Below are positions 28,840 through 54,238 of a DNA stretch of 64,000 nucleotides, piece after piece. Below the pieces are notes generated by a model. It was not told the origin of the DNA. It saw nothing but the letters and a program-made list of their open reading frames with translations, and did no database searches. The DNA comes from Klebsormidium nitens. Lineage: Eukaryota; Plantae; Klebsormidiophyceae. The stretch lies in contig DF236969.1 in the NCBI GenBank assembly GCA_000708835.1, forward strand, positions 1 to 64,000. Direction: 5' to 3'. Made by a program: the position numbers and the translations under genes. Position 1 is the first letter of the stretch. Every line of letters begins with the position of its first letter.

Positions 28840-31800
28840 ATGATGGGGCGCGTGGGGGCCCGGGGTCTCTTTGGGATCCTGGGCCGCGTGCAGAATCTGC
28901 GGTGTACTTCTCACCACTCAAATGCTGGCACAGGGCAGATAGCTTCAGGGTTGGAGAGAACTGTTGCAAACGCTAGTGGTGATTTGTCGGGGTTGTTTTG
29001 CAGAGAGGTAAGAACAAGGAAACCTTTCGTTCGGAAAAGGCAACTGCGAGTGTCTTTGAATCAGCGTTATTTTTTTTTTGCAGCGTTCTCAGCACTATCA
29101 AAGAAGTGGTGTTTCTAGGATTGTATGCTGAGTCTGTGGTAACTTCAGGCAATTGGCTTTCAGGTATCGTGCATCAACCTGATTATATTAGCACTTCCAG
29201 CTGCTAACTAGTCCGCATCTAACATCGTGCAGTTGAGTAGCGGGTCAGTTTCTGGTCGGAGCATCAGGGTCAGAGGGTTTGCAAGTTTGGCTGCACTGAA
29301 AGACGAGAAGGTGAGGCGCCTGTACTCCTGAAAATGGTCAAAGACATCAAGAGCAGCTGAAGCCCTAAAAGTCGCAATCGCACAGCTCTGTAGCCTTTTC
29401 TCATCGCGCAGCTATCCATAACCGTGCATCGTTATTCCGTGACGAACTCCTTTGTAGGGTCAATCAGTCAAGCGCCGGCACTGGATGTTTCCAGAACAGA
29501 TAGGGAAAACCTCAAAGACTTTGAGGTGTCTGAGGCATGCAACAGGGAATGTACCATGTTAATGCCGTACAACAATTCCATCATGGAAATTTTTTGAGAT
29601 GGCTTTTTGGAAAGGGAAAGGACTAGTCCAGTGCGCCGGCGATGCATCCTTGGCATGCCTTGACCAACAGTGGCATCGTAAGTGCAAGCGTTGTACATCT
29701 CTGTGTCTTGCAACTTTTTAAATTTTGAGGCCTCTTCTAGTGATCTCTTGTATGATGTACAATACTTGCGACTTGAGGCCCGGCGGAACCTGCTTGATAG
29801 GGCCCCCTTTGTATCGGTTCCCTTGTCAATCTCCAAGGCATTGCTTTTCCAGAGTCATTGAAGTGAGCGAAACAGAGGCCAGGTGTAAGCTCTCTGTTCA
29901 GTGACCAAGTAATCTACCCTGGCAACTTCCGTTCGTTGCGTCCAAATACCGCGTCAAAAGAGACCTATCATTACGCTAGATATGGTACTTTCTGGTCTGG
30001 AAACGAGGTTTTAAAATTGCAATTGTGAGGAATGTTTCCTTTCCCACTTCAGGAAGCATGGCGATCAGAGATGGAGAAGATTCGCAACATTGGCATTAGC
30101 GCCCACATCGACTCTGGCAAGACCACGTTGACTGAGCGGATTCTATTCTATACGGGGCGGATCCATGAGATTCATGAGGTAAGGCTGTGGTTGCCTTTAC
30201 TCTTTTCAAGAATACCTCTTCATCATTTCCTGTGGTCCATTTGCTGCTATGATTTATGTGCTACAAAAGTCGCATGTTTTGATTCAGAAGGTGCGTTACA
30301 AGTGGAAGGGAGAATTTGATTGCACTGGTATATTCTTTCCTGGTAGACTCGCTGAACACGCGTCAAGTTGAGTCCAACAGAAGTGGTGGTCAGAAAAGAG
30401 GACGAATCGAGGTATACGGCGATCAATCAGGACGAGGAAACCTTCGTGACAGTCTGCACTAAGTTCGCAAATCATGTGGCCAACTTTGATAGCTTGTAGC
30501 AGACATGAGCAAGGAAACGAGCACAGGCTCCGTACAGGCAATGACGGCTCGACTAAGCACGGATTGTTTCAGAAGTATTGTATTTAAGTGGCCAGTAAGT
30601 ATTGTAATTTCTAATAGCTGTTATGACTGTTGTGGCTCAGTCTGTCAGTGCTCGGGATGCACAGACGCCAGACGACTTTATCCAAATATTTCAAAACATG
30701 ATTTCGCAGATAAGCTCGCTGGAAGCCCAGTTCTAATTTTCATCATTTTCAGGTGAGGGGAAAGGACGGGGTGGGGGCCAAGATGGACAGCATGGAACTA
30801 GAGCGGGAAAAGGGGATCACGATCCAGTCTGCCGCAACGCACTGCACGTGGGGCGACAACCAGATCAACATCATCGACACACCAGGTGAGTGCGGAGAAT
30901 GTCGGGCAGAAAATGAGCGTTCATATCATCATTCTTCCTGATTCTTTGTGGTATAACAAATGTGTAACTCGTGTTTCTTTCATGCGTCATGCTCGTCTTC
31001 TTCCCGTGGAGGAGGGATGAAGGCGTTTTCTTTTCGTGTGGCGTCGTCAGGAGCCATCAACGTCAGGAGCCCTTTCTTCCCTCAGTTGAAGCGACCTAGT
31101 TTTCTTCGGGAGGTTCTCTCAAGTTTCTGATTGCAGGTGACCAACCTGTGTCGCAGTCCTTTCGACGCTATTTTGGTTCAGGTTCAAAGCGGGCTTGCGT
31201 GTCCAGGATTAAGTCATCACTAATTCCGCCTCAACCCCTTGTGTAGGCTAAACGAATCTGAAAAAGGAATGGAATGACTCCGGACGTGCTAAATGAAGAT
31301 TCTCGGATGCCGATAGTCCGAGATTTTCCAGGACGGTTTTTCCCAAGTTGTCTTTCCTGAATCTTGAAGTTGAGGGAAAGCGGGGCCTTTGTGTGCATGA
31401 CCGAACCCCCTCACAAGCTAGTACTTCGTACACTCATCTGACGGTCCCCAGACACTCTTCCTTTACTACCTTCTCCGACCATGTTCAAGGATCTGACAAT
31501 CCGGATGAAACGTGTGCTGCGTGTGCTGCGTCGATCTTACCGGCCACTCCTTCAATGAATCCAAATGCTTTTCTGAGGGTATTTTCGTTCTCATCCGCTC
31601 TCCCTTCCTCCCAGGTCACGTGGACTTTACGATCGAGGTGGAGCGCGCTCTGCGCGTGCTGGACGGCGCGGTGCTGGTACTTTGCAGCGTGGGGGGTGTC
31701 CAGTCGCAGTCCATCACCGTGGACCGTCAGATGAAACGCTACAGCGTGCCACGTGTCGCCTTCATCAACAAACTAGACCGAGCGGGGGCGGACCCCTGGA

Positions 31801-34800
31801 GGGTCATCAACCAGCTCAGGTAAGGAGGAGAGGTGTGGGGTCTTGGTTTAACTGCGAGTCCGCTGTATGATCTCGAAGCTGGCACGATAGTCAGCGATAC
31901 TCGATCGTCTTTACGCCTCCCTAAGGTGATTCGTCAGCGTGCAACGGCATCCTTACAGGACACTGTTTTCGTCCGCAACTGAGGAACTCTCGGTGGGGCC
32001 GTTTGGTCATAACACGTTCCAGGCCGCAGCTCCGAAAACTTCTGTGTGGCGAATATTCCTAAAAGCGATCTTTTCGGCAACCAAGCTGACCTGCATCCAA
32101 CTCTTTCCGAAAGTCGAAGACATCTCGGGCATGCTGTTTGGTCCTTAAGGCAAAGCCAGGGTCCTGTCCTTTTCCTCTAGTTCGAGCCCCCATCTTTGGC
32201 GACGAGCACATTCCTTATGATGCATCCGTCCTGTTCTGTTTCAAGACGAAGCTCCGGCGCAACTGCACGGCAGTACAGGTGCCCGTTGGCCCGAGAAGAA
32301 GTTGGAGGGCCTGGTCGATCGTATCAGCATGAAGGCCTGCTCGCATTTCTGACACTCCCGTTTCGTTCGGGCAGAACGAAGCTCCGGCACAAGTGCGCAG
32401 CGGTCCAGGTGCCTAGCGGCTACGAGAACGAACTGAAAGGCTGTGTGGATTTCATTGCCATGTAGGCCTAATCGTTCTTCTGACGCGTTTGTTCCGTTGC
32501 GTTCCGTTCTTTCCTTTCAGAACGAAGCTCCGACACAACTGCGCGGCGGTCTAGGTGCCCATCGGCCTGAAAGGCATTTCTAGGGCCCTGTCATTTCCTT
32601 CCAAACTCGATTCCCGTTGGTCGTTCTTCTGACGTATTTCATTCCGTTCCGTTGTTCCGTACAGAACGAAGCTCCGGCACAACTGCGCGGCGGTCCAAGT
32701 GCCCATTGGCCTCGAAAACGAGCTGGAAGGTCTTGTCGACCTCATCGACATGAAGGCCTACTCGTTCGACGGCGCGAGCGGGGAGACGATCCGGGAGCGG
32801 CCCATTCCGGCCGGAATGCAGGCGCTGTGCGAGGAGAAGCGGACGGAATTGATTGAGAAGCTGGCGGAGGTGGACGAGGACATGGCGGAAAAGTTCTTGG
32901 GGGAGGAGAAGGTTGACGCGCATATGCTGCAGGTAGGGCTTCTCTGCTTGTCTTCTCTGTTCCTCATCGCCCGAATACAGGTTTTGTCTGCTTGTCTTTT
33001 GTGTCTCTCTGTTTCTCGCGTTTGAATTGTGTTTCTGCTCATCTTCTCCGTATATCCTTGTCCAGACGAGGAGGGCAGCTTTTGGCAAAGGTTGATGGGG
33101 TTCAGCGTTGCATCCTTTGGGCGGGTTCGGTGTGTCAAGGGGACCGTGTCTCCTGACCCGCAATTTGTTAACGTCGCTGTGGTCTTTTCAGACCATTTGC
33201 CACGGCTGCGCTCCACCCCCCCCCAACATAATCTACCAGGCCGCCATTCAGCGGACGACCCTGATCCGGGAATCGGCGCCGCTTTTCATGGGAAACGCGT
33301 TCAAGAAGCAGTGGGTGCCGGTTTCCCTTTTGGTCGCTTGTGAACGGGAAGCTTGTAAACGTACCCATACAAATCCTTTCTTCGAGCAGGCCGCCATTCG
33401 GCGGGCAAGCCTCAGCCTACTTCTCACTCCCATGCTCATTGGCAACCCGTTGAAGAAGGACGGCGTCTAAATATCACAGGGGTAATAGAAGCAATACCCC
33501 TTCTATTACTTCCTTTCGTACCTTTCACTTATACAACCCTTTTTGATTCGTGTTAACAGGCTGCCATTCGGCGGGGGACTCTGAGCCTGAATTTCACGCA
33601 TATGTTTTGGGCAGTGCTCTCATGAACAAGGGCGTGCTGGTTTCTCCTTTTCTGTTGTTTCTTGAAGTGGAAAATTAAAGCTTACTTATACCAAACTTCT
33701 GACTCCCTTCGAACAGGCCGCGATTCGGCGGGCGATCCTGAGCCTGGATTGCATGCCCGTCTCAATGGATAGCGCGTTTGAAGAACAAGGCCGTTCTTGT
33801 TACGTCTGTTGAGACTTTTCAAGTAAAGAAGACTTTCGTAACACTTCCAACCAACCTGCTTAATCTTTCTTTCACCAGGCCGCCAAAGTCTGGAGTTCAC
33901 GCCCGTCTTCATGGGCAGCGCATTCATTAACAAGGGCGCGCTGGCTTACCTTTTCTTCCATCTTGTGAACTGAAACTTTATAATCTACGCATTCAAAACT
34001 TCTGACTTCCTTCAAACAGGCCGCAATTCGGCGGGCGACCCTGAGCCTGGAGTTCACGCCCGTCTTCATGGGCAGCGCGTTCAAGAACAAGGGCGTGCAG
34101 CTGTTACTGGACGGTGTCATCGACTTTCTGCCGGCGCCCACCGAGGTGGAGAACCACGCGCTGGACCAGAACAGGGAGGAAGCCAAGGTACGCTGACGTC
34201 AAATCTGGAAGCGGTGACGTAAGACTCGGAAACGAGCAGTCGGGCAGCCTGAGGTCGTTTGCATGGACGCCTCTGGCGGCGGACCGAAAAACTTCGTCAG
34301 TAGGGCTAGCGCCCCCCATTTCATTGCCAAGAGCGATTGTAGACAGCGAAGGGCCGTTTCTCGGCTGGCCGAAAGAGAAGAACGACAACTGTTACCAAAC
34401 CCGCTTGTGGGCACTTCATCCGTATGCGCATCTAGAGGACTCGCACGCCTCGAGCCTTCGTCCATGTGAAGTTCCAAAATTTTGTGAATTTAACATCCGA
34501 TAATATGAGGAGCCTGAGCTTGGACTCTTGGTGTTTTCCAGAATTGCAAACGATTGTCCAACAGCATTCTGGGAGTGAATAAAAAGTATCGCTATTGCTG
34601 ACGACTTAATGCAAACGTGCAAAGTCTCAAGCCAACATTTGGGCTAACCTGGCGGCATCGCCCAGGTGCCTCTGACGAGCTCTCCTAGCGGTGGGCCCGG
34701 CTTTCAAGCTGGAGGAGGGGCGCTTCGGTCAGCTGACGTACAGGCACAGTAAATGGATCCTGAAAAGGGGCGGACCTATTCTTCCTTTGGTACATGCTAA

Positions 34801-36696
34801 CCCGGATTATTTGCACAGGTTCCGCTAAGGAGTTCCCCGAGCGGCCCGCTGGTGGGCCTGGCCTTCAAGCTGGAGGAGGGGCGCTTCGGTCAGCTGACGT
34901 ACAGGCACGCTTTATTAAGCCCTTTTTCTGTAACATTCCTTCTGCTAACCCGGTTTATCTGCACAGGTTCCGCTGACGAGCTCCCCGAGCGGTCCACTTG
35001 TGGGCCTGGCGTTCAAGCTGGAGGAGGGGCGCTTCGGTCAGTTGACGTACATGCGCATCTACGAGGGCAGTCTGCGCAAGGGCGAGTTCATCACCAACTG
35101 TGTGACGGGGAAGAAGGTCAAGGTGCCGCGCCTGGTGAGCCGGCCGCTGACGCCACGGTCCAAGTCATTGCTGACGTCGTGCTACGAGTGGGGAGGGTCC
35201 TGACGTCACGGGCGTGAAAGCTCAGCGGAGGGCAGCCGCTTTGTGGTGTTTGTGCTGGAAAATTTTCTTTAAGCTATTCTCGACGACGCCACTGCAGAAA
35301 ACAAGGGAAGGAGAAAGGCTGCCTTTGATACCGACCCACCGTCAGCTTTATATCAACCAAGAAACTGTTCGTTTCTATGAGGCTGAATGCTGGTTAATTG
35401 GAAAGGGTAAGTCCTCTAATGGTTCCGCCTTTGGCCGGCCCAGTCGCTGACGTCATGCTCCGCTCTGGCCAGGTGCGCATGCATTCTGACGACATGGAGG
35501 ACGTCAGCGAGGCGCGGGGGGGGGACATCGTGGCCATGTTTGGGGTGGACTGCGCGAGCGGGGACACGTTTACCGACGGTTCTGTGAAATACACGATGAC
35601 GTCAATGAACGTCCCGGACCCGGTCATGTCGCTGGCAATCACGCCGACCAATCGGGAAGGATCTACGAATGTAAGAAAAATCAGAGGCTACCTACATGTT
35701 TGTTTGTGGTTGATTGTGTTGACGATTGTGACTTTGCCCAGAGGATTATGTATTATGATGGTTTCGGAGCAGTTATGTCTTTGGCGATAACGTTGACCAA
35801 CCAAACGGGAGCACGAATGTGAGGCGTATTTTTCTGCTGCTCTTTTCAAAGGACCTTTGATACCTTAGGTGTGAAAAGACATTAGAGTTCCAGAAGGCGT
35901 TCACTTGACGAGTCCGTCAAATGCCATGTCCTGGATTGACGTTCTCAAAAAGAAGCGCTCTCAAGAGAGATTTTGCGAAGTCACGGAATTCCAAGAGTCA
36001 GGTCCATCAAAGTCAAATTAGGCCTGTCTCGTAATCAGTGTCATCCTGCACTTCTTGCAGACTGAAAGATATCAGGAGGAGTTTCCGGCGGTTTAAGGGT
36101 GTGCCCGCTTGATCGACAAATCTGATGCGCACACTTAGTCGACGAGCTCAAACCAATAGGCTCCGCTTAATGTTGAAGAATCTTTGGTGTGTGGTCCTTT
36201 GAAAGACACGAACCCAGAAGAGACAGCTTTCAACTCATGTTTTCAAAGAGCCGGGTAATTTCGAAAAGCAAATTGAAATCTAATCACCACATATTTCCGT
36301 TCAAACTTTCAGCAACCCCGCTGACGTTACACTGCTCCCGCCCTGCGCAGTTTTCGCGCGCGCTGAATTGGTTCCAGAAGGAGGACCTGAGCAAGAGTGT
36401 TGGGCCTCATGACACACGTTTTACAAGCTCTCAGTAACCTGCTGACGTCGATCCCTGCAGTTTTCACGCGCGCTGAACCGGTTCCAGGAGGACACAACGT
36501 TCCGCGTGAGCCTGCTTCAAGAGAGCGTGACTGTCTCTCAAAAGTAGCCCCCAACTTAGTCTAGCTAGGAGGCTCAGTCACGGTGCTAAGATGCTGACGT
36601 CACACTGCTCCCGCCCTGCGCAGTTTTCGCGCGCGCTGAACCGGTTCCAGAAGGAGGACCCGACGTTCCGCGTGAGCCTGGACCCCGACAGCGGGC

Positions 36697-36733
<37 letters not shown>

Positions 36734-39700
36734 CATCTACGTCGAGCGGCTCAAGCGCGAGTACAAGGTGGAAGCGACGGTTGGCAAGCCGCAGGTAAGA
36801 GAGTTCGTTGGAAACTTCTGCGTCCAGGTTCCCTGAGCACGGCGACTCAGATTAGTTTCTGCCCAGATTTCATGGAACTGATCACGGCGGATTCTCACGA
36901 GTGACGCTCAAGCGCGAGTACAAGGTGGAAGCAACGGTCGGCAAGCCGCAGGTGAGATTTGTTCTCCGATTCTTGATTTGAGGGTTTGTGGATTTAACGT
37001 GTACCCATTTGCGTCGGATTGTGTCAGTGCTGCGATCGATGAGGCTTCTTTTTGAAGGGCGTACGGGACTGCTTCGGGAACTTCCCGTCGAAGTTGTCAA
37101 GCGCGAGTACACGGGGGAGGCCACCGTCGGCAAGCCGCAGGTTATTAGCTACCCCTGTTCTACGGGGACGCTTTTGTGAGGTTCTATATTGTAATCTTGA
37201 TTGTTCTGTGTTGATTTCGCTACGGCGGCGAGAATAGAGTCTATTTTGGAGATCTACGGGTCCGATCCGGATGCAATGCCCGGCGACGTCTTCAAAGGCG
37301 AGTAGACGGTGGAAGCCTCCGTCAACAAGCCGCAGGTGAGAATTTGTTGCGAAGTCTGCGGGGGGATTGACGAGTTTGATTGTCTGGAGTGTATGGGACT
37401 GTTCCGGCAACTTCCATGGCTAAGTTCTCAAGCGCCAGTGCAATGTCGAAAGGTCGTAGGCAAGCGCCAGGTGAGATTTGTTCTCGGCGGACTTTTCCGG
37501 AGGGTTGGGGCGAGGATCTCGTGTAGAGATTGCGGATACAGACGGATTTGAAGGTTCTAAAAACCAGTCTATCAAACTTCAGGTGATTCTGACGTAAGCA
37601 TGAAGGGTTGGATCGTCGAACATTCGAGTTGTCAATCCTCCGGAGTTTCGCGTACGAGTCGAAGTTGAAGAGACCTTGAAAATCCACTAGGAAGCGAGAG
37701 TGTCTGGTCCTTTCTAGATTTTGCGAGACGCCACCGCTGCGCCACCTTCGTTGTTTTTCCCAGAAAGGGCTGTCGATTTCACACACCTTCAGTCCGTGAA
37801 AACCGAACAAAGACCGTAGAATAGTTTCCGTACCCAGCATACTGATCAGAAAAGAGCCGGGCGCAGCGCGGACTTGCGTCCCGGCCACAGGAACCGTTTG
37901 AGCCACTTGAACCACTCAATTCCGTACTCTCGGCATTCTGCGTCCAGACTATTGCTTCTTCCCGATCCTCTTCCGGAGGACTGATTCTGCTGCGCCGAGT
38001 CACTTCTCTGCCGAAGAAGCATTTGTGCTAAAGCCCCAGCATTTCAACCATCAATCCTCAAACTCCCATGTTATCCTCTTCTTCAGGTGAATTTCCGGGA
38101 ATCAGTGACGCGACGAGCCGAGTTTGACTACTTACACAAAAAGCAGTCGGGCGGGCAGGGCCAGTTCGGGCGGGTTATTGGATATTTGGAGCCGCTTCCG
38201 CGAGACCACCCCAAGAAAGTCGAGTTTGTGAACGAAATCATCGGGCAGGTGCGAATATTCCACTGCTCAGGCCCACCCTTTGAACTCCCTTTGCATCTAC
38301 TCGAGTCACGAGCGCTGGAGGATCTCGCGCTGTTGCATGCAATGTGATGCTTGCGGATGGCCGTCTTTGCGACCTTCAAACAACATGAAAGGAGTGTAGC
38401 ATTGGAGTGGCTCGCAACAATCGGTGCCCGTTCGCAAGCTTGTTAAACGTCGCTGTCTCAATGAATATCAAATCCCTGGAGCTGCCTTCGATCAAATGCC
38501 TGCGGTCTTTGCAATAGTTGTTTGCACTGAACGTTTTTTGCAATAGCGGCCTCCTGATTCTCCGCATCACACTTGCTAGCAACGGCTGACTTCTTCTATC
38601 ATTCGGCTGACGCAGGTGCTGACGCCATCCTGGGTGGCGGCTTGCGAGAAAGGGTTCCTGGAGGCGGCCAACTCCGGCACGCTGATCGGGCATCCGGTGG
38701 AGTATGTGCGGATCTGCTTGACGGACGCGGCGTCACATGCGGTGGACTCCAGCGAGCTGGCGTTCAAGCTGGCGTCAGTGTGAGTGTTCCGGGCCCGGGG
38801 ACGCAGAGTTGGCCTAGTTTTTCTCCATTTCCTTCTTATTTGTCGATATCCTAACCGCTATTGCACCTTCTGGGGACGCGGCGTTACACGCAGTGGACTC
38901 CGGCGAGCTGGCATTCAAGCTGGCGTCAGTGTGAGTTTTCCAGATCCCGGAGAAGCAAACTGTTTTGGTCTGTTCTACCTTTTCGTTCCCACTTTTGATT
39001 TAAGCAATCGCGGTTGCACCTTGCTGGGGATGCGGCGTCAAGCGCGGCGGACTTCAACGAGCGAGCAGCGTTTAAGCTGGCGTCTTGTGAGTGCTCTGGC
39101 GCCGGGAAATCATTCTGTCCATGTTGATTGTCCTTGGTTTGCACGGGCCCCCGTTTCTGTGGTTTCTCGGTCACGGGGCATCTCCGACTTTCTTCCGGGT
39201 TTCTTTTCCTCCTCCTTTTCTGTGCAAGTGAGTGGCTTTTGGTCTCACTTTCTCCCGAAAGATTTGCGCAGCTTTGTCATCTTGTTAACCGTTTTTTCAG
39301 GGCCTGGCCGCCGCTACAAGGGAAACAAACCATGTGGGTGGTCCGTTGACTCCACTCGCGCTTAACCCGAACTTGTGACAGCAAAGTTGACAGCACCTGA
39401 AACAAGACACAACAGGACCGCGCGAAGTCATCTGTGCGTCGTTGATCAACCCGGGTCGGAGAGCAAACACGTCATCCAAAGCTTGCATTTGACGATATCC
39501 TCAGCTTTGTCAAAGTGTATCCCTTCGCGATAACACTGATTAAGAGACGCGCCCGGCGTTTGAAGGTATACCTATACACAGTCCAGCAGGTCGGATCGCC
39601 CATGGACTGTCTTCACCAGCTCATACCCGCTTTTCAAACTTCTGCTAACCAACTCGCTAACCCTCGCCCTACTCCGTGCAGGTACCCGTTGCGACAATGT

Positions 39701-40812
39701 TACTCCAAGGCTTCGCTCATCATTTCTGGAGCCGTTGACGAACGTGCATACAAGTGCGCCCTGTAACCTTGCCCTTTGCCCGTCTTCTAACCACTTCTCA
39801 ACCCCTTGCTAACCCGCTCACTCTTGCCCGAACCCGTGTAGGTACGCGTTCCGGCAATGTTACTCGAAAGCATCGCCCATCATTTTGGAGCCGTTGATGA
39901 ACGTGGAGATCAAGGCGCCCCAGGAGTTCCAGGGCGCCGTGGTCAGCGGTGTGAATAGGCGGAAGGGCCTCATCGTCGGCAGCGAAACGGAGGGCGACGA
40001 TGTCGTCATCAATGCGCACGTAAGTGCTTTTTTCCCCCTCTAGTATGTGGGCGATTCTGAGATCTGGAGACAGAAGAAGTGTGAACATTGTCATTGTCAG
40101 GATGACGACATTGTCATTAATGCGCAAGTGAATAGTTGAGGATTCGGTTTGCGAGTGATCTGAAAGTTGGGAGGCAGAGAGGTGGGAACAGGCGCAAGAG
40201 TCTTGTGTCAGTTGCAGTAAGACGAAAGTAACGAAAGCGGCACGGGACCACCTAGAGCTTTTCTTTCTTGTGTTTCTAAGATTCAGGATGGGACGATATT
40301 GGAGAGGGCTTAAGGGCGGAAATATACTCTTGGTCATTGGCGGGGTATTCCGCTTTGTGGCCGGGTTGTAAATTGAGTCCGTAGTGCAGGCGCTCCTCAG
40401 TAGCTTTCAGGACTTTAGCTACTCCTTTCGATTGTGTGGTGTTGCTCCTTAGCACACTTTCGTGCTCGAACATTCAAGCCGCAGACTACGATTTTGCCAG
40501 AAGAATGGTTGCATGTGGCGGCTCAAAAGGCTCCTGAAGGGGCCTTGTTGCAACCCGTTCCTACTTTTGCCTGTAGATTGACACATGTCTGCTTCGCTCC
40601 TTGGTCCTAGGTGAAGGTTAAAGTTCCGGCACACTGACTGGTATTCTGCATTCTTGCAGGTTCCGTTGAACAACATGTTTGGCTATTCGACCGACCTCCG
40701 GTCGACCACACAAGGCAAGGGCGAGTTTACGATGGAGTACATGGACCACCAACCGGTAACGAGGGACGTTCAAGAGCAGCTTGTGAAGGCGCACTCTCAA
40801 GCAAGCGAGTGA
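28840..40812 (+). CDS. MEFG1: Mitochondrial elongation factor G1; 14 exons, 779 aa
   Basis: Exons 28840-29007, 29233-29310, 30053-30178, 30753-30885, 31615-31819, 32665-32932, 34020-34187, 34967-35134, 35473-35670, 36624-36794, 38087-38248, 38616-38779, 39842-40019, 40660-40812 (sum 2340 nt). Motifs [70 protein letters not shown] and [13 protein letters not shown]; Arg/Ser-rich presequence. Confidence 0.97.
32241..32664 (+). repeat. Three echoes of the EF-G exon 6 acceptor junction (fainter remnants near 31872 and 32025)
   Basis: Copies of (A)ACGAAGCTCCGGCACAACTGC start at 32246, 32375 and 32521; live exon at 32665. ttCTGAC branch motifs precede the 32375, 32521 and live acceptors. Confidence 0.95.
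33215..34019 (+). repeat. Five echoes of the EF-G exon 7 acceptor junction
   Basis: CAG|GCYGC..ATTC copies start at 33240, 33390, 33560, 33717 and 33879; live exon at 34020; spacing 141-170 bp. Confidence 0.95.
34635..34966 (+). repeat. Two echoes of the EF-G exon 8 acceptor junction
   Basis: CAG|GT(G/T)CC.CT..TTCAAGCTGGAGGAGGG copies at 34666 and 34819; live exon at 34967; spacing 153 and 148 bp. Confidence 0.95.
36315..37480 (+). repeat. EF-G exon 10 flanked by two acceptor echoes upstream and four donor echoes downstream
   Basis: CAG|TTTTC copies at 36351 and 36461 (live 36624). AAGCCGCAG|GT-type copies end at 36951, 37140, 37335 and 37470 (live 36794). Confidence 0.95.
37575..38086 (+). 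repeat. Faint echoes of the EF-G exon 11 5' region
   Basis: cgcgtacgagtcgaagttga (~37651) vs cgcgacgagccgagtttga; aaaagagccgggcgcagcgcg...tttgagccactt (~37849-37908) vs aaaagcagtcgggcgggcagggcc...tttggagccgctt; ttccgga...gccgagtcact..aagaagca (~37971-38020). Confidence 0.55.
38780..39235 (+). repeat. Donor echoes downstream of EF-G exon 12 (two clear, one faint)
   Basis: AAGCTGGCGTCAGT|GTGAG-type ends at 38931 and 39086, faint GCAA|GTGAGT at ~39227; live end 38779; spacing 152, 155 and ~141 bp. Confidence 0.9.
39505..40135 (+). repeat. Acceptor echo(es) upstream and a donor echo downstream of EF-G exon 13
   Basis: cag|gtacccgttgcgacaatgttactccaaggc (39682) vs tag|gtacgcgttccggcaatgttactcgaaagc (39842); gatgacgacattgtcattaatgcgcaa|gtgaat (ends 40127) vs ggcgacgatgtcgtcatcaatgcgcac|gtaagt (ends 40019). 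Confidence 0.85.
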
Positions 40813-41427: not shown

Positions 41428-41517
41428 TAGGTAGTAGAGTGACAGAGACCGTTAATATAGTAAACGGTCGTATAGGTAGTAGAGTGACAGAGACCGTTAA
41501 TATAGTAAACGGTCGTA
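41428..41517. repeat. Perfect 45-bp tandem duplication, each unit containing a hairpin
   Basis: TAGGTAGTAGAGTGACAGAGACCGTTAATATAGTAAACGGTCGTA x2; GACCGTT/AACGGTC 7-bp stem. Confidence 0.97.
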
Positions 41518-52500: not shown

Positions 52501-53904
52501 TTCTACTGGTGCTCACCAGAGCCCATTGCAAAGTGACCCGGCTGAGCCGTTCATCCACGCGTTCATCAGAGTCTCGTTCGACTTTCTTATAGGGGGCGTC
52601 TGCACTCGCAAGGGCATTTAAAATCGGACGGCAAAAACGCGCGAGTTGATCTATCGGACGATGCGCACTTTGTTAGTGTGCCGTCGTCACGCTTCAGCGC
52701 TGCCGCCGGCGTGACGCCTACGCCCAGTTTAAGATCTTCACCTTCTGCTCGAGGTGTGCGCAGAAACAACTCTGAGAACGATGGAACGACCTTGCCGTCA
52801 CGGCCAGCAACGAGCAAGGCTGGGTTGGAAGTGAAAGCACTGAGCCTCGTGGTGACGTAGGCTTGTGACGCAAGCGCCAGATAGATCGTGAGGTAGGACC
52901 AATTGCTTGACGTCGCTTGCAGAAAGTAGACACAAGGACAGTAAGGAGCACAATAGTATGACGTATTGGACCTTCGATATGCAGCATTTGAAGTACCGAT
53001 TGCTTCTCGACGAAGCGCGCTTGAATGGAGCGATTGCCGTCCTTCAGATCCACTTTGCATTAGATTCAGAGCTGATGCAGATCTGGATCGGAACTGATTG
53101 AGACCAGATTACCACATCCAAATCTGGTCCGATAGTGTTTGATTCTGAAGAAGGATTCATTCGAGATGAGTCCAAACGGAGTCCGAATCCAGTGGGCTGA
53201 ATCAGGTCCGAAGCAACACCGCCACATGTCTGGCCCGGTCCGACACGTGTCCGAATCGACCCGAACTTGTACGGTTCAAACAGGATCTGAAGTGCACTTC
53301 GCTTTGGATCTGCTTCGGACCTTATTCGGACAACGACTTTCCCGCCGGCGCGCGCGCATTTAAGCGTACGCCTTTGATGACCGTTCTTGTCAAGTGTCAC
53401 GGCCGGCTGCCTGATGAGTACGTACTGTAAGGACCAAGGCTCATCAGGAATGCAGATTGCAGTCAGATGTAGAAGACCAGTCCCCCTCTGGCCGCCCATC
53501 TTCGAAGCGCTTCGTATTGGTACCGAGCCGCCGTGTCCGTCAGCTTCGAGAAAAACAATTTCGAGATGAAGCAGCTGGGGTCCTCCGAGTTGTCCGGCTC
53601 CCTCGCTTCGTGTGCGTCCGCCACCTGGCCTATAAAAATCCTATCATGGCGTTACTACACCTGGAATAAGCACGTCTCGCCTCTCAGCGATGGAAGCAGC
53701 CACACTTTGAATGACCGTTCAGTTGAGAATAATGCAGGAACGCCCCACGACTGTAAGCTTGAAAAGTAAACGGCAAAGAATGAAGGAGCCAGGTGTTTGA
53801 ATCTTGTTCAAGCAGATCGGATTCCAGGACCGTTGGAACCGGTAGGAAATTTAGCCTGCAGTAGGGAGGAAGCGCAGAGTTGAGGGCCTCCCGGTTGTCC
53901 ATTC

Positions 53905-54238
53905 ACCGGGCTCAGGTAAGCGGACGGCCTGGTTCAGAAACTTAGCTCGGGGGGGGGCGCGCGCAGAGCGGTGAGGGTTCTACCCGGTGACACGTTTACC
54001 AGGGATGGGTTTGCAAACGGCGGGGCGCAGAAAGTGCTTGGGGGGGGCGGGACGCGGAACGGTGACGGTCTGCCCGGTAGTCCGTTCACCGAGCAGGGCT
54101 TTGCGGACGGGGGGAGCAAGAATCAGCTCGGGAGGGGCGGTGCGGAACGGTGAGGGTGTGCCCGGTGGTCCGTTCACCGGGGAGGGGTTTGCAAACGGCG
54201 GAGAGCAGAAGTTAGCTCGGGAGAGGGGGGGCGTACCA
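53905..54238. repeat. ~90-bp GC-rich tandem repeat, ~3.5 copies
   Basis: Units starting GGTGA(G/C)GG at ~53970, 54061 and 54150 share CCCGGT..(C/A)CGTT(C/T)ACC..GG.TTTGC..ACGG.GG; partial unit before. Confidence 0.85.

What the first reader, a model, noticed from the sequence alone, without database searches (positions are those of the whole stretch)
31865..40135. Polarised arrays of degenerate splice-junction 'echoes' around seven EF-G exons: candidate undescribed intron-growth or splice-decoy system
Seen: introns 5-13 of the EF-G gene hold about 20 clear and 7 faint tandem copies of exon-intron junctions. Geometry is strict: branch-point/pyrimidine/AG + exon-start copies lie only upstream of their exon, and exon-end + GT copies lie only downstream. 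Units are mostly 130-195 bp, nearly all keep an intact AG or GT, and identity generally falls with distance from the live exon. Established: a tandem duplication spanning one splice junction gives this geometry and leaves one complete exon. Inference: the recurrence at seven exons of one single-copy housekeeping gene, with a narrow unit size close to nucleosome/Okazaki-fragment length, suggests a repeated mechanism, and the stacks preserve older states of the exon. They may act as decoy splice sites or poison exons. I know of no description of this pattern but could not search for one.
Basis: partly seen in the sequence, partly recalled or inferred. Interest (0 to 1): 0.92.

Follow-up and report, generated by a model that had tools for sequence, protein, structure and literature searches.

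The report
Splice-junction copy arrays in EF-G introns
Seven exon borders of an algal EF-G gene are followed or preceded by stacks of decaying, roughly 150-base copies of themselves; these are unused relics of repeated local duplication that now make up about a third of the gene's intron DNA, not a splice-decoy system.

Summary
An organellar-type EF-G gene (exons 3-14, 30029-40812, + strand) carries 19 clear and 2 marginal copies of its own exon borders. They lie at 7 clear junctions (exons 6, 7, 8, 10 on both sides, 12, 13). All 12 acceptor-type copies lie upstream of their exon and all 9 donor-type copies lie downstream. The period is 108-195 bp (median 151). The arrays fill about 3.1 kb, 36% of the intron DNA.

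No other ~150-bp-period repeat exists in the 64 kb window, although pairs of neutral copies are detectable by the same method. RNA contigs from two studies splice only at the live sites; one echo-site joint reaches about 1%. The echoes mutate evenly over codon positions (38:50:51) and carry stops, so they are dead copies. Some keep older synonymous states of the exon.

Three related contigs carry their own arrays at other junctions of the same gene, so formation is recurrent and specific to each lineage. Junction-straddling arrays exceed the random-placement expectation (13 of 14; P 1.5e-5 to 6e-4). The unit length is constrained (158 +/- 18 bp), which argues for a junction-linked duplication process with a length ruler. 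The decoy or poison-exon reading is not supported.

Earlier notes of this scan report the same pattern on many other pieces of this genome, which they name as Klebsormidium nitens.

The parts
30029..40812 (+). Exons: 30029-30178, 30753-30885, 31615-31819, 32665-32932, 34020-34187, 34967-35134, 35473-35670, 36624-36794, 38087-38248, 38616-38779, 39842-40019, 40660-40812.
   Evidence: tblastn with the 759-aa EF-G P0126. Joined exons give a 705-aa ORF with a single terminal stop. Junctions of exons 7-12 come from RNA contigs. Pfam GTP_EFTU, EFG_III, EFG_IV and EFG_C hits lie on the orthologous contigs.
32225..32664 (+). Exon 6 acceptor array: 3 echoes (exon-derived parts 32246-32343, 32375-32477, 32521-32572), periods 130, 146, 144. 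The most distal copy has AA in place of AG. All three carry stops in the exon frame.
   Evidence: Positional orthologues of the two proximal units exist in L002.
33232..34019 (+). Exon 7 acceptor array: 5 echoes (33240-33318, 33390-33466, 33560-33637, 33717-33803, 33887-33941), periods 146-170. A two-unit (303-320 bp) higher-order repeat is present. Identity to the live exon rises from 74-77% in the two outermost copies to 91% next to the exon.
33311..34019 (+). Minor spliced-out segment: a cryptic GT just after the distal exon 7 echo is joined to the live exon 7 acceptor.
   Evidence: joint 33310->34020, GT..AG, depth 4 against 364 for the main isoform, in one run only.
34643..34966 (+). Exon 8 acceptor array: 2 echoes (34666-34748, 34819-34906), periods 153 and 148. 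The cores are 89-90% identical to the live exon. Identity between the two echoes is mosaic (73%, then 97% over 58 nt), and the 25-45 nt spacers are unrelated.
35755..35823 (+). Marginal exon 9 donor echo (score 18, 69-70% identity), 148 bp after the live donor.
   Evidence: It scores only slightly above the control maximum of 14.
36320..36623 (+). Exon 10 acceptor array: 2 echoes (36351-36390, 36461-36527), periods 110 and 163. The distal unit is 92-97% identical to the live junction, including 29 nt of intron.
36795..37485 (+). Exon 10 donor array: 4 echoes of the last 44-55 nt of the exon plus GT (36906-36951, 37086-37140, 37292-37335, 37427-37470), periods 157, 189, 195, 135. All four GT are intact.
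38780..39106 (+). Exon 12 donor array: 2 echoes (38874-38930, 39028-39084), periods 151 and 157. Both GT are intact.
39624..39841 (+). Exon 13 acceptor echo: 1 copy (exon part 39682-39761 plus about 55 nt of intron with branch-point-like CTAAC motifs), period 160.
40099..40126 (+). Marginal exon 13 donor echo (score 16).
   Evidence: It is barely above the control maximum and is treated as unconfirmed.

Best explanation
The echoes are relics of repeated local duplications of a piece about 150-160 bp long that straddles one splice junction of a pre-existing intron.

Geometry. Each event leaves one complete exon and pushes a truncated exon edge, with its splice signal, into the intron. That is why acceptor copies stack upstream and donor copies stack downstream.

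After the duplication. Arrays are remodelled by further duplication of one or two units, by loss of units, and probably by short gene-conversion tracts.

Fate of the copies. They are not selected. They decay at the neutral rate, and the splicing machinery ignores them. I infer this is because a truncated exon edge lacks the partner site needed to define an exon, and because the donor nearest the exon wins.

Net effect. The introns grow: about 3.1 kb, 36% of this gene's intron DNA.

Two features point to a junction-linked initiating lesion with a physical length ruler, rather than random duplication plus selection: the events are concentrated on junctions, and the unit length is constrained while the junction's place inside the unit is not. 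What the lesion and the ruler are is unknown.

Status of the steps:
- Shown: the anatomy, neutrality, silence in RNA, recurrence specific to each lineage, the junction excess and the length constraint.
- Inferred: the reason the sites stay silent and the nature of the initiating lesion.
For: - Anatomy and polarity: 21 of 21 copies are in the geometry expected of tandem duplicates. Units are homologous through both exon-derived and intron-derived parts in most arrays. Intron parts are about as diverged as the square of the exon-part identity predicts.
- Neutral decay: where the live exon equals the outgroup, echo changes split 38:50:51 over codon positions (chi-square P 0.32). Where the echo equals the outgroup, changes split 3:0:19. 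Stops or frameshifts are seen in 5 of the 12 acceptor echoes translated, including all three exon 6 copies.
- Silence: RNA contigs of two studies (depth 272 and 364) join only live sites. One echo-related joint has depth 4. Introns appear as unspliced background at 1-4%.
- Recurrence: L002 has four exon 5 acceptor echoes (period 118-143; exon and intron parts both 82-89% identical between units) that the window, L001 and L003 lack. L001 and L003 carry arrays at the exon 5 donor, exon 6 acceptor and donor, exon 8 donor and exon 11 acceptor. L003 has a 171-bp exon 12 donor unit that its sister L001 lacks. The exon 6 array is shared by position with L002, with spacers 71-83% identical.
- Junction link: 13 junction-straddling arrays against 1 intron-internal array, where random placement in the same introns predicts 36-48% (P 1.5e-5 to 6e-4). 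With the live units masked, pairs of echoes are still detected in 4 of 6 arrays, yet nothing comparable exists in the other roughly 53 kb. Tandem repeats elsewhere have periods of 45 bp or less, or are a coding repeat.
- Ruler: across 14 arrays the period is 158 +/- 18 bp, while the part upstream of the junction ranges 31-92 nt and the part downstream 39-155 nt (r = -0.83, permutation P 1e-4).
- Remodelling: there is a two-unit periodicity in the exon 7 array and mosaic 73%/97% identity between the exon 8 echoes (Fisher P 0.0015).
Against: - Spacers of 25-45 nt in the exon 8 array show no similarity between units, although the flanking cores are 83-97% identical. The same holds for the roughly 70-nt stretch tested in the L003 exon 12 donor unit. 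A plain tandem duplication does not predict this. It needs gene conversion of the cores or filler DNA inserted at the event.
- With the exon-derived parts masked, only 2-3 of the arrays remain detectable. Ascertainment therefore favours arrays that contain exon sequence, and the junction excess may be overstated.
- Contigs drop rare variants, and nonsense-mediated decay could hide transcripts that use echo sites.
- The excess over neighbouring genes is weak: 7 of 22 junctions against 0 of about 12 inferred junctions, P 0.03.
- The exon structure of the rest of the window was not established.
Confidence: 0.7

Rival explanations
1. Random small tandem duplications arise everywhere. Selection removes those inside exons, and the slowly evolving live exon keeps junction-spanning ones recognisable for longer. 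The junction association would then be a filter plus a detection effect, with no special mechanism.
For: - The geometry is forced by tandem duplication.
- The intron part of acceptor units always includes a branch-point-like motif (31 nt or more), as a viability filter predicts.
- With exon-derived parts masked, most arrays are no longer detected.
Against: - Pairs of neutral echoes are detectable in 4 of 6 arrays, yet no ~150-bp-period repeat exists in the other roughly 53 kb.
- Within the same introns the expected junction share is 36-48% against 13 of 14 observed.
- Tandem duplications elsewhere in the window are 7-45 bp.
- A filter does not explain a period of 158 +/- 18 bp when the allowed range is roughly 60-400 bp.
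Confidence: 0.12
2. The arrays are ancient. The exon-derived cores are kept similar to the live exon by gene conversion running from the selected exon into the copies. The young-looking copies and the identity gradient would then reflect conversion frequency, not recent duplication.
For: - Identity between the exon 8 echoes is mosaic, and the spacers beside 90-97% identical cores are unrelated.
- The L003 exon 12 donor core is 83-87% identical to the live exon while its intron part is unalignable.
- The first 25 exon-side positions are about 90% conserved in the echoes.
- The exon 6 and exon 7 acceptors carry arrays in every lineage where they could be examined.
Against: - In the L002 exon 5 array the intron-derived parts are as similar between units as the exon-derived parts (83-87% against 82-89%), and the array is absent in three other lineages.
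- The exon 11 echo in L001 and L003 is no closer to its own live exon than to the other lineage's live exon (81.5-84%).
- In most window arrays the intron-part identity matches simple decay.
- Echo changes show no sign of being overwritten.
Confidence: 0.12
3. The echoes are a functional system: decoy splice sites or poison exons that tune EF-G expression.
For: - AG or GT is intact in 18 of 19 copies, against about 13-14 expected from overall identity.
- Each acceptor echo keeps a branch-point-like motif.
- One minor joint uses a cryptic donor beside an echo.
Against: - AG/GT is no better kept than the adjacent exon-side bases.
- Use is at most about 1% in two RNA studies.
- The copies decay neutrally and carry stops.
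- Which junctions carry arrays, and how many copies, differs between close relatives.
- No known RNA family lies in the gene.
Confidence: 0.04
4. The copies are made through RNA: reverse transcripts of pre-mRNA or splicing intermediates are inserted next to the junction. This could explain the junction link and the spacers that have no homologue.
For: - Some acceptor cores start close to the branch-point motif (exon 6 and exon 8 arrays).
- Unique spacers separate some cores.
Against: - Other acceptor units extend 70-90 nt upstream of the AG, well past the branch point.
- Donor units contain about 100 nt of intron start.
- Most units are contiguous head-to-tail copies that include intron sequence.
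- No copies are dispersed to other introns or elsewhere in the window.
Confidence: 0.02

Closest known systems
[quoted passage not shown] 2006, PMC1557585)
   Same: A tandem repeat straddles an exon-intron boundary, so the authentic donor is followed by intact pseudo-donors. These stay silent, and the site next to the exon is the one used.
   Different: - It is one locus with a 37-bp unit, and only donors are involved.
- Here the units are about 150 bp.
- Both donors and acceptors are affected.
- 7 junctions of one gene carry arrays.
- Relatives have independent arrays.
- By the scan's other notes, many genes of this genome show the pattern.
Intron gain or intron sliding by tandem genomic duplication of a segment with an AG|GT proto-splice site (PMC3265369, PMC4974935, PMC2891723)
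   Same: A local tandem duplication duplicates splice signals, and one copy of the exon sequence becomes intronic.
   Different: - Those events create a new intron or move one.
- Here all array-bearing introns already exist at the same positions in L001, L002 and L003.
- The duplications only lengthen them, repeatedly.
[quoted passage not shown] 2016; Vaughn and Bennetzen 2014; both known to me and cited in PMC7464560)
   Same: It is a plausible way to make a head-to-tail duplicate whose length equals the distance between two nicks. Klebsormidium is a streptophyte.
   Different: - By my recollection those duplications are mostly much shorter and are not tied to splice junctions.
- Neither paper could be read here.
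- Breakpoint microhomology could not be tested because the copies have decayed.
Tandem exon duplication giving mutually exclusive exons
   Same: Local tandem duplication occurs inside a gene.
   Different: - Those copies are whole exons with both splice sites and intact frames, and they are used in mRNA.
- Here the copies are truncated at one side, carry stops, and are not used.

Membership tests
Junction-spanning tandem repeat with silent pseudo-splice sites (F7 IVS7 type) | The repeat element nearest the exon spans the exon-intron boundary, and the further elements lie head to tail inside the intron. | tested here: met
   Every upstream copy starts at exon position 1-2, apart from one truncated copy. 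Downstream copies end at or within 3 nt of the exon end. Units are contiguous.
Junction-spanning tandem repeat with silent pseudo-splice sites (F7 IVS7 type) | The pseudo-sites keep the splice consensus, but the mRNA uses the authentic site. | tested here: met
   AG or GT is intact in 18 of 19 copies. RNA contigs join only live sites, apart from one joint at about 1%. Contigs cannot exclude rare use.
Intron gain by tandem duplication (proto-splice-site model) | The intron is absent in relatives and consists of duplicated exon sequence. | tested here: not met
   All array-bearing introns are present at the same positions in L001, L003 and, where covered, L002. Intron 11 is absent in L001 and L003 but shows no similarity to its flanking exons.
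Transposon-derived introns (introner-like elements) | Similar copies are dispersed in many introns or loci. | tested here: not met
   There is no similarity between arrays of different introns or with the rest of the window. Each array matches only its own exon.
Mutually exclusive or tandemly duplicated exons | Complete exon copies with both splice sites and an open frame, included in mRNA. | tested here: not met
   The copies cover only 37-103 nt from one exon edge. Stops or frameshifts occur in 5 of the 12 translated acceptor echoes. No copy appears in the main mRNA.
Poison exon or decoy splice-site regulation | Sequence and position are conserved between species, with inclusion in a measurable share of transcripts. 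| tested here: not met
   Arrays differ between four lineages. Decay is neutral. Use is at most about 1%. The effect of nonsense-mediated decay was not testable.
Recursive splice sites | An acceptor is directly followed by a regenerated donor (AG|GT) at the intronic site. | tested here: not met
   Only the exon 8 and exon 13 acceptor copies read AG|GT. The exon 6, 7 and 10 copies do not.
   Only the length agrees (median 151, mean 158 +/- 18 bp). No chromatin or replication data were available.

The most novel reading that the evidence does not exclude
Klebsormidium and its relatives have a duplication process targeted to splice junctions and coupled to transcription or splicing. Its product length is set by a physical ruler of about 155 bp, for example a nucleosome or an R-loop bounded by two nicks. 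It fires repeatedly at the same genes and is a major, so far undescribed, route of intron growth.
Probability: 0.35. Interest if true: 0.85.

Novelty: new variant of a known kind. Interest (0 to 1): 0.62.

Why it matters
How introns grow, and why splice-site look-alikes inside introns stay silent, are open questions. Here more than a third of a housekeeping gene's intron DNA can be traced to one process.

The process has a narrow length and a strong preference for exon borders, and it has acted independently in related lineages. If the junction link holds genome-wide, it points to a mutational mechanism tied to transcription, splicing or chromatin at exon borders. It also gives a natural experiment of many intact but ignored splice sites for studying splice-site choice in a streptophyte alga.

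The stacks also serve as dated fossils of earlier exon sequence.

Tried and rejected
- Tandem Repeats Finder misses the arrays, which are too diverged or too gapped for it.
- A codon-usage scan trained on EF-G, meant to map exons in the rest of the window, was too insensitive. There are too many long ORFs to screen. The junction count of the other genes therefore stays unknown, apart from about 12 junctions inferred from blocks conserved with L002.
- Run X13, chosen as DNA of a relative, turned out to hold spliced sequence. It gave no orthologous introns.
- Searching the unique spacers against the window and the three loci found no source.
- Intron 11, which is absent in L001 and L003, shows no duplicate signature.
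- There is no tRNA or Rfam family in the gene.
- Other length differences between L001 and L003 are not recognisable tandem copies.
- Seven full-text searches found no description of such arrays in Klebsormidium or elsewhere. The main text of the 2014 genome paper does not mention introns or repeats.
- PMC4020087 could not be read.
- One search was a mistyped pattern.
- Assembly artefact was considered and rejected.


Full report
WHAT IS THERE

The window has about 50% G+C. A self-comparison finds 31 local direct matches with offsets up to 1.5 kb. Of these, 28 lie between 32239 and 39920. The repeat finder gives the same families, spaced 110-195 bp apart. Tandem Repeats Finder reports none of them.

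The region is an EF-G gene on the + strand. A 759-aa EF-G from the representative search (P0126) aligns from residue 40 to 751 in 12 blocks. With GT-AG borders the blocks join into a 705-aa ORF with one terminal stop. RNA contigs of two studies confirm the junctions of exons 7 to 12. Introns 3-13 total 8,666 nt.

CATALOGUE AND CONTROLS

Each exon was aligned to its two flanking introns. As a control, each exon was also aligned to all non-adjacent introns. The control maximum was 14 in 220 comparisons.
- In the flanking introns, 19 hits score 21-70 and two score 18 and 16.
- The 12 hits in upstream introns all start at exon position 1-2, apart from one truncated copy.
- The 9 hits in downstream introns end at, or within one base of, the last exon base, apart from one copy that stops 3 nt short.
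- Below score 15, adjacent introns give no more hits than non-adjacent ones (4 in 22 comparisons against 21 in 110).

Clear arrays lie at seven junctions:
- Exon 6 acceptor: 3 copies.
- Exon 7 acceptor: 5 copies.
- Exon 8 acceptor: 2 copies.
- Exon 10 acceptor: 2 copies.
- Exon 10 donor: 4 copies.
- Exon 12 donor: 2 copies.
- Exon 13 acceptor: 1 copy.

Periods are 108-195 bp, median 151. Together the arrays span about 3.1 kb, or 36% of the intron DNA. Identity to the live exon falls with rank from it (Spearman -0.87). The exon 10 acceptor array is the one exception.

The polarity follows from the geometry. Only the copy that is contiguous with the rest of the exon can be the live one.

NOT AN ARTEFACT

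- Logan contigs of the source DNA tile 33200-39199 without a mismatch. Depth is even at 15-23, apart from a short high-copy stretch at 34290-34326.
- Low-depth RNA contigs from 2022 and 2024 studies reproduce the exon 7 array exactly.
- Contigs from other samples carry analogous arrays (see the section on relatives).

ARE THE COPIES USED?

The dominant mRNA contigs (depth 272 and 364) join only the live sites. Intron sequence appears as read-through contigs at 1-2% of that depth, and at about 4% for intron 12.

The only joint at an echo runs from a cryptic GT at 33311, just after the distal exon 7 echo, to the live acceptor. It has depth 4 in one run. Contigs drop rare forms and nonsense-mediated decay could hide some, so the claim is that steady-state use is about 1% or less.

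ARE THE COPIES CONSTRAINED?

The echoes differ from the live exons at 202 of 1,284 aligned positions. I polarised these differences with the orthologous exons of three relatives.
- In 139 cases the live exon agrees with the outgroups, so the echo changed. These split 38:50:51 over codon positions, which shows no coding constraint.
- In 22 cases the echo agrees with the outgroups, so the live exon changed. These split 3:0:19, as synonymous changes in the live exon would.

All three exon 6 echoes and two others carry stops or frameshifts in the exon frame.

AG or GT is intact in 18 of the 19 copies aligned across the junction, against about 13-14 expected from overall identity. The neighbouring 25 exon-side positions are just as well kept, at about 90%. 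The dinucleotides are therefore not specially preserved.

RELATIVES

Three ORF fragments from the representative search led to three contigs.
- L001 and L003 come from one JGI metagenome. They are sister lineages with exons about 85% identical to the window.
- L002 comes from a Logan assembly, with exons 90-96% identical to the window.

All introns that carry arrays exist at the same positions in these contigs. The duplications therefore lengthen introns and do not create them.

The arrays differ between lineages.
- L002 has four exon 5 acceptor echoes (period 118-143). Their exon-derived and intron-derived parts are equally similar between units (82-89%). They are absent in the window, L001 and L003. 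That is a clean formation specific to one lineage.
- The two proximal units of the exon 6 acceptor array are shared by position with L002. Spacers are 71-83% identical and orthologous cores 68-82%. That array therefore predates the split.
- L001 and L003 carry arrays at the exon 5 donor, exon 6 acceptor, exon 6 donor, exon 8 donor and exon 11 acceptor.
- L003 has a 171-bp exon 12 donor unit that L001 lacks.
- Window copies above about 86% identity are probably younger than the split from L002, whose neutral identity to the window is about 72%. These lie at exons 7, 8, 10 (both sides) and 12.

IS IT MORE THAN RANDOM DUPLICATION PLUS SELECTION?

Three tests bear on this.

1. Detection. With all exon-derived sequence masked, only 2-3 arrays remain visible, so ascertainment bias is real. 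With only the live units masked, pairs of echoes are still found in 4 of the 6 arrays that have two or more echoes. These pairs are neutral on both sides. The remaining roughly 53 kb still shows nothing of that period. Other tandem repeats in the window have periods of 7-45 bp, or are a 90-bp proline-rich coding repeat on the minus strand.

2. Placement. I took the intron lengths with the arrays removed and a 157-bp unit. Random placement then predicts that 36% of surviving events straddle a junction, or 48% if intron-internal ones are detected only 60% of the time. Observed over four lineages: 13 junction arrays and one intron-internal repeat, which itself abuts the exon 7 acceptor in L001 (P 1.5e-5 to 6e-4).

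3. Length. Over 14 arrays, the part upstream of the junction ranges 31-92 nt and the part downstream 39-155 nt. Their sum is 158 +/- 18 bp (r = -0.83, permutation P 1e-4). Viability limits explain the lower bound on the intron part: acceptor units always include a branch-point-like CTAAC or CTGAC motif. They do not explain a narrow total.

The comparison with neighbouring genes is weak. It sets 7 of 22 EF-G junctions against 0 of about 12 junctions inferred from blocks conserved with L002 (P 0.03). I could not map exons in the rest of the window.

REMODELLING AND LOOSE ENDS

- The exon 7 array has a two-unit periodicity of 303-320 bp.
- The two exon 8 echoes are 73% identical over 33 nt, then 97% over 58 nt (Fisher P 0.0015). 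Spacers of 25-45 nt between cores that are 90-97% identical show no similarity.
- In the L003 exon 12 donor unit the core is 83-87% identical to the exon, but its intron part cannot be aligned.
- These features suggest short gene-conversion tracts or filler DNA at the joints. No source for the spacers was found.
- In most arrays the intron parts are as diverged as simple decay predicts.

MECHANISM

I commit to serial junction-straddling duplications that are selectively neutral and silent, with later unequal exchange and occasional conversion (confidence 0.7).

The silence is best explained by rules known elsewhere. In the human F7 gene, a 37-bp minisatellite whose first unit spans the exon 7 donor leaves functional pseudo-donors unused, because the site next to the exon is selected first (PMC1557585). 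A truncated exon edge also lacks the partner site needed for exon definition. That second point is my inference.

What initiates the events and sets about 155 bp is unknown. Two nicks a nucleosome length apart, repaired as in the plant nick-repair model (Schiml et al. 2016, cited in PMC7464560), would fit the length. This is untested.

COMPARISON AND NOVELTY

The kind is known as single cases: a tandem repeat across a splice junction that gives silent pseudo-sites, and tandem duplication as a source of intron change (PMC1557585, PMC3265369, PMC4974935, PMC2891723).

New here:
- The unit size.
- Both junction types are affected.
- The density within one gene.
- The independent recurrence in relatives.
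- The statistical link to junctions.

Seven full-text searches and the 2014 genome paper gave no description of this pattern.

Earlier notes of this scan report the same pattern on many other pieces of this genome and name it Klebsormidium nitens. I did not verify the species name.

The decoy or poison-exon reading is not supported.

Noticed in passing
window 38249-38615; L001:15665-15990; L003:15774-16099: Intron 11 of the window (367 nt, with 8 ambiguous bases shared by both ends) is absent in L001 and L003, where exons 11 and 12 form one exon. This is an intron presence/absence difference between relatives. The intron shows no similarity to its flanking exons.
   Followed up: partly
window 34290-34326: A 37-nt stretch in intron 7 has DNA word depth of about 2570, against about 17 around it, and contigs branch off on both sides. 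It is probably a piece of a high-copy repeat or of organelle-like DNA. Only one copy is in the window.
   Followed up: partly
window 41428-41517: A perfect two-copy tandem duplication of 45 bp lies just downstream of the EF-G coding end.
   Followed up: no
window 53846-54233 (minus strand): A 90-bp (30-aa) proline-rich repeat, about 3-4 copies, is open in one minus-strand frame. It is a coding repeat, not a junction echo.
   Followed up: partly
L003:1431-2517: A 567-bp tandem duplication at 99.8% identity lies in a neighbouring gene region and is absent in the sister contig L001.
   Followed up: no
L001:12014-12270: An intron-internal tandem repeat (offsets 63, 101, 138) ends 3 nt into exon 7. 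L003 has a single copy.
   Followed up: partly
window 34020-38790 (run X13): A run labelled as DNA of another organism holds spliced EF-G sequence in two variants, one identical to the window and one about 90% alike with third-position differences. It may be a mixed culture, a hybrid or a second gene copy.
   Followed up: no
window 38135-38168: A 34-nt stretch of exon 11 (the conserved GGQGQFG region) is identical to part of another expressed gene. This gives a false joint 34101->38135 in both the DNA run and an RNA run.
   Followed up: no
window 38780-39841: Intron 12 is retained in RNA contigs at about 4% of the mRNA depth, more than the 1-2% seen for the other introns.
   Followed up: no
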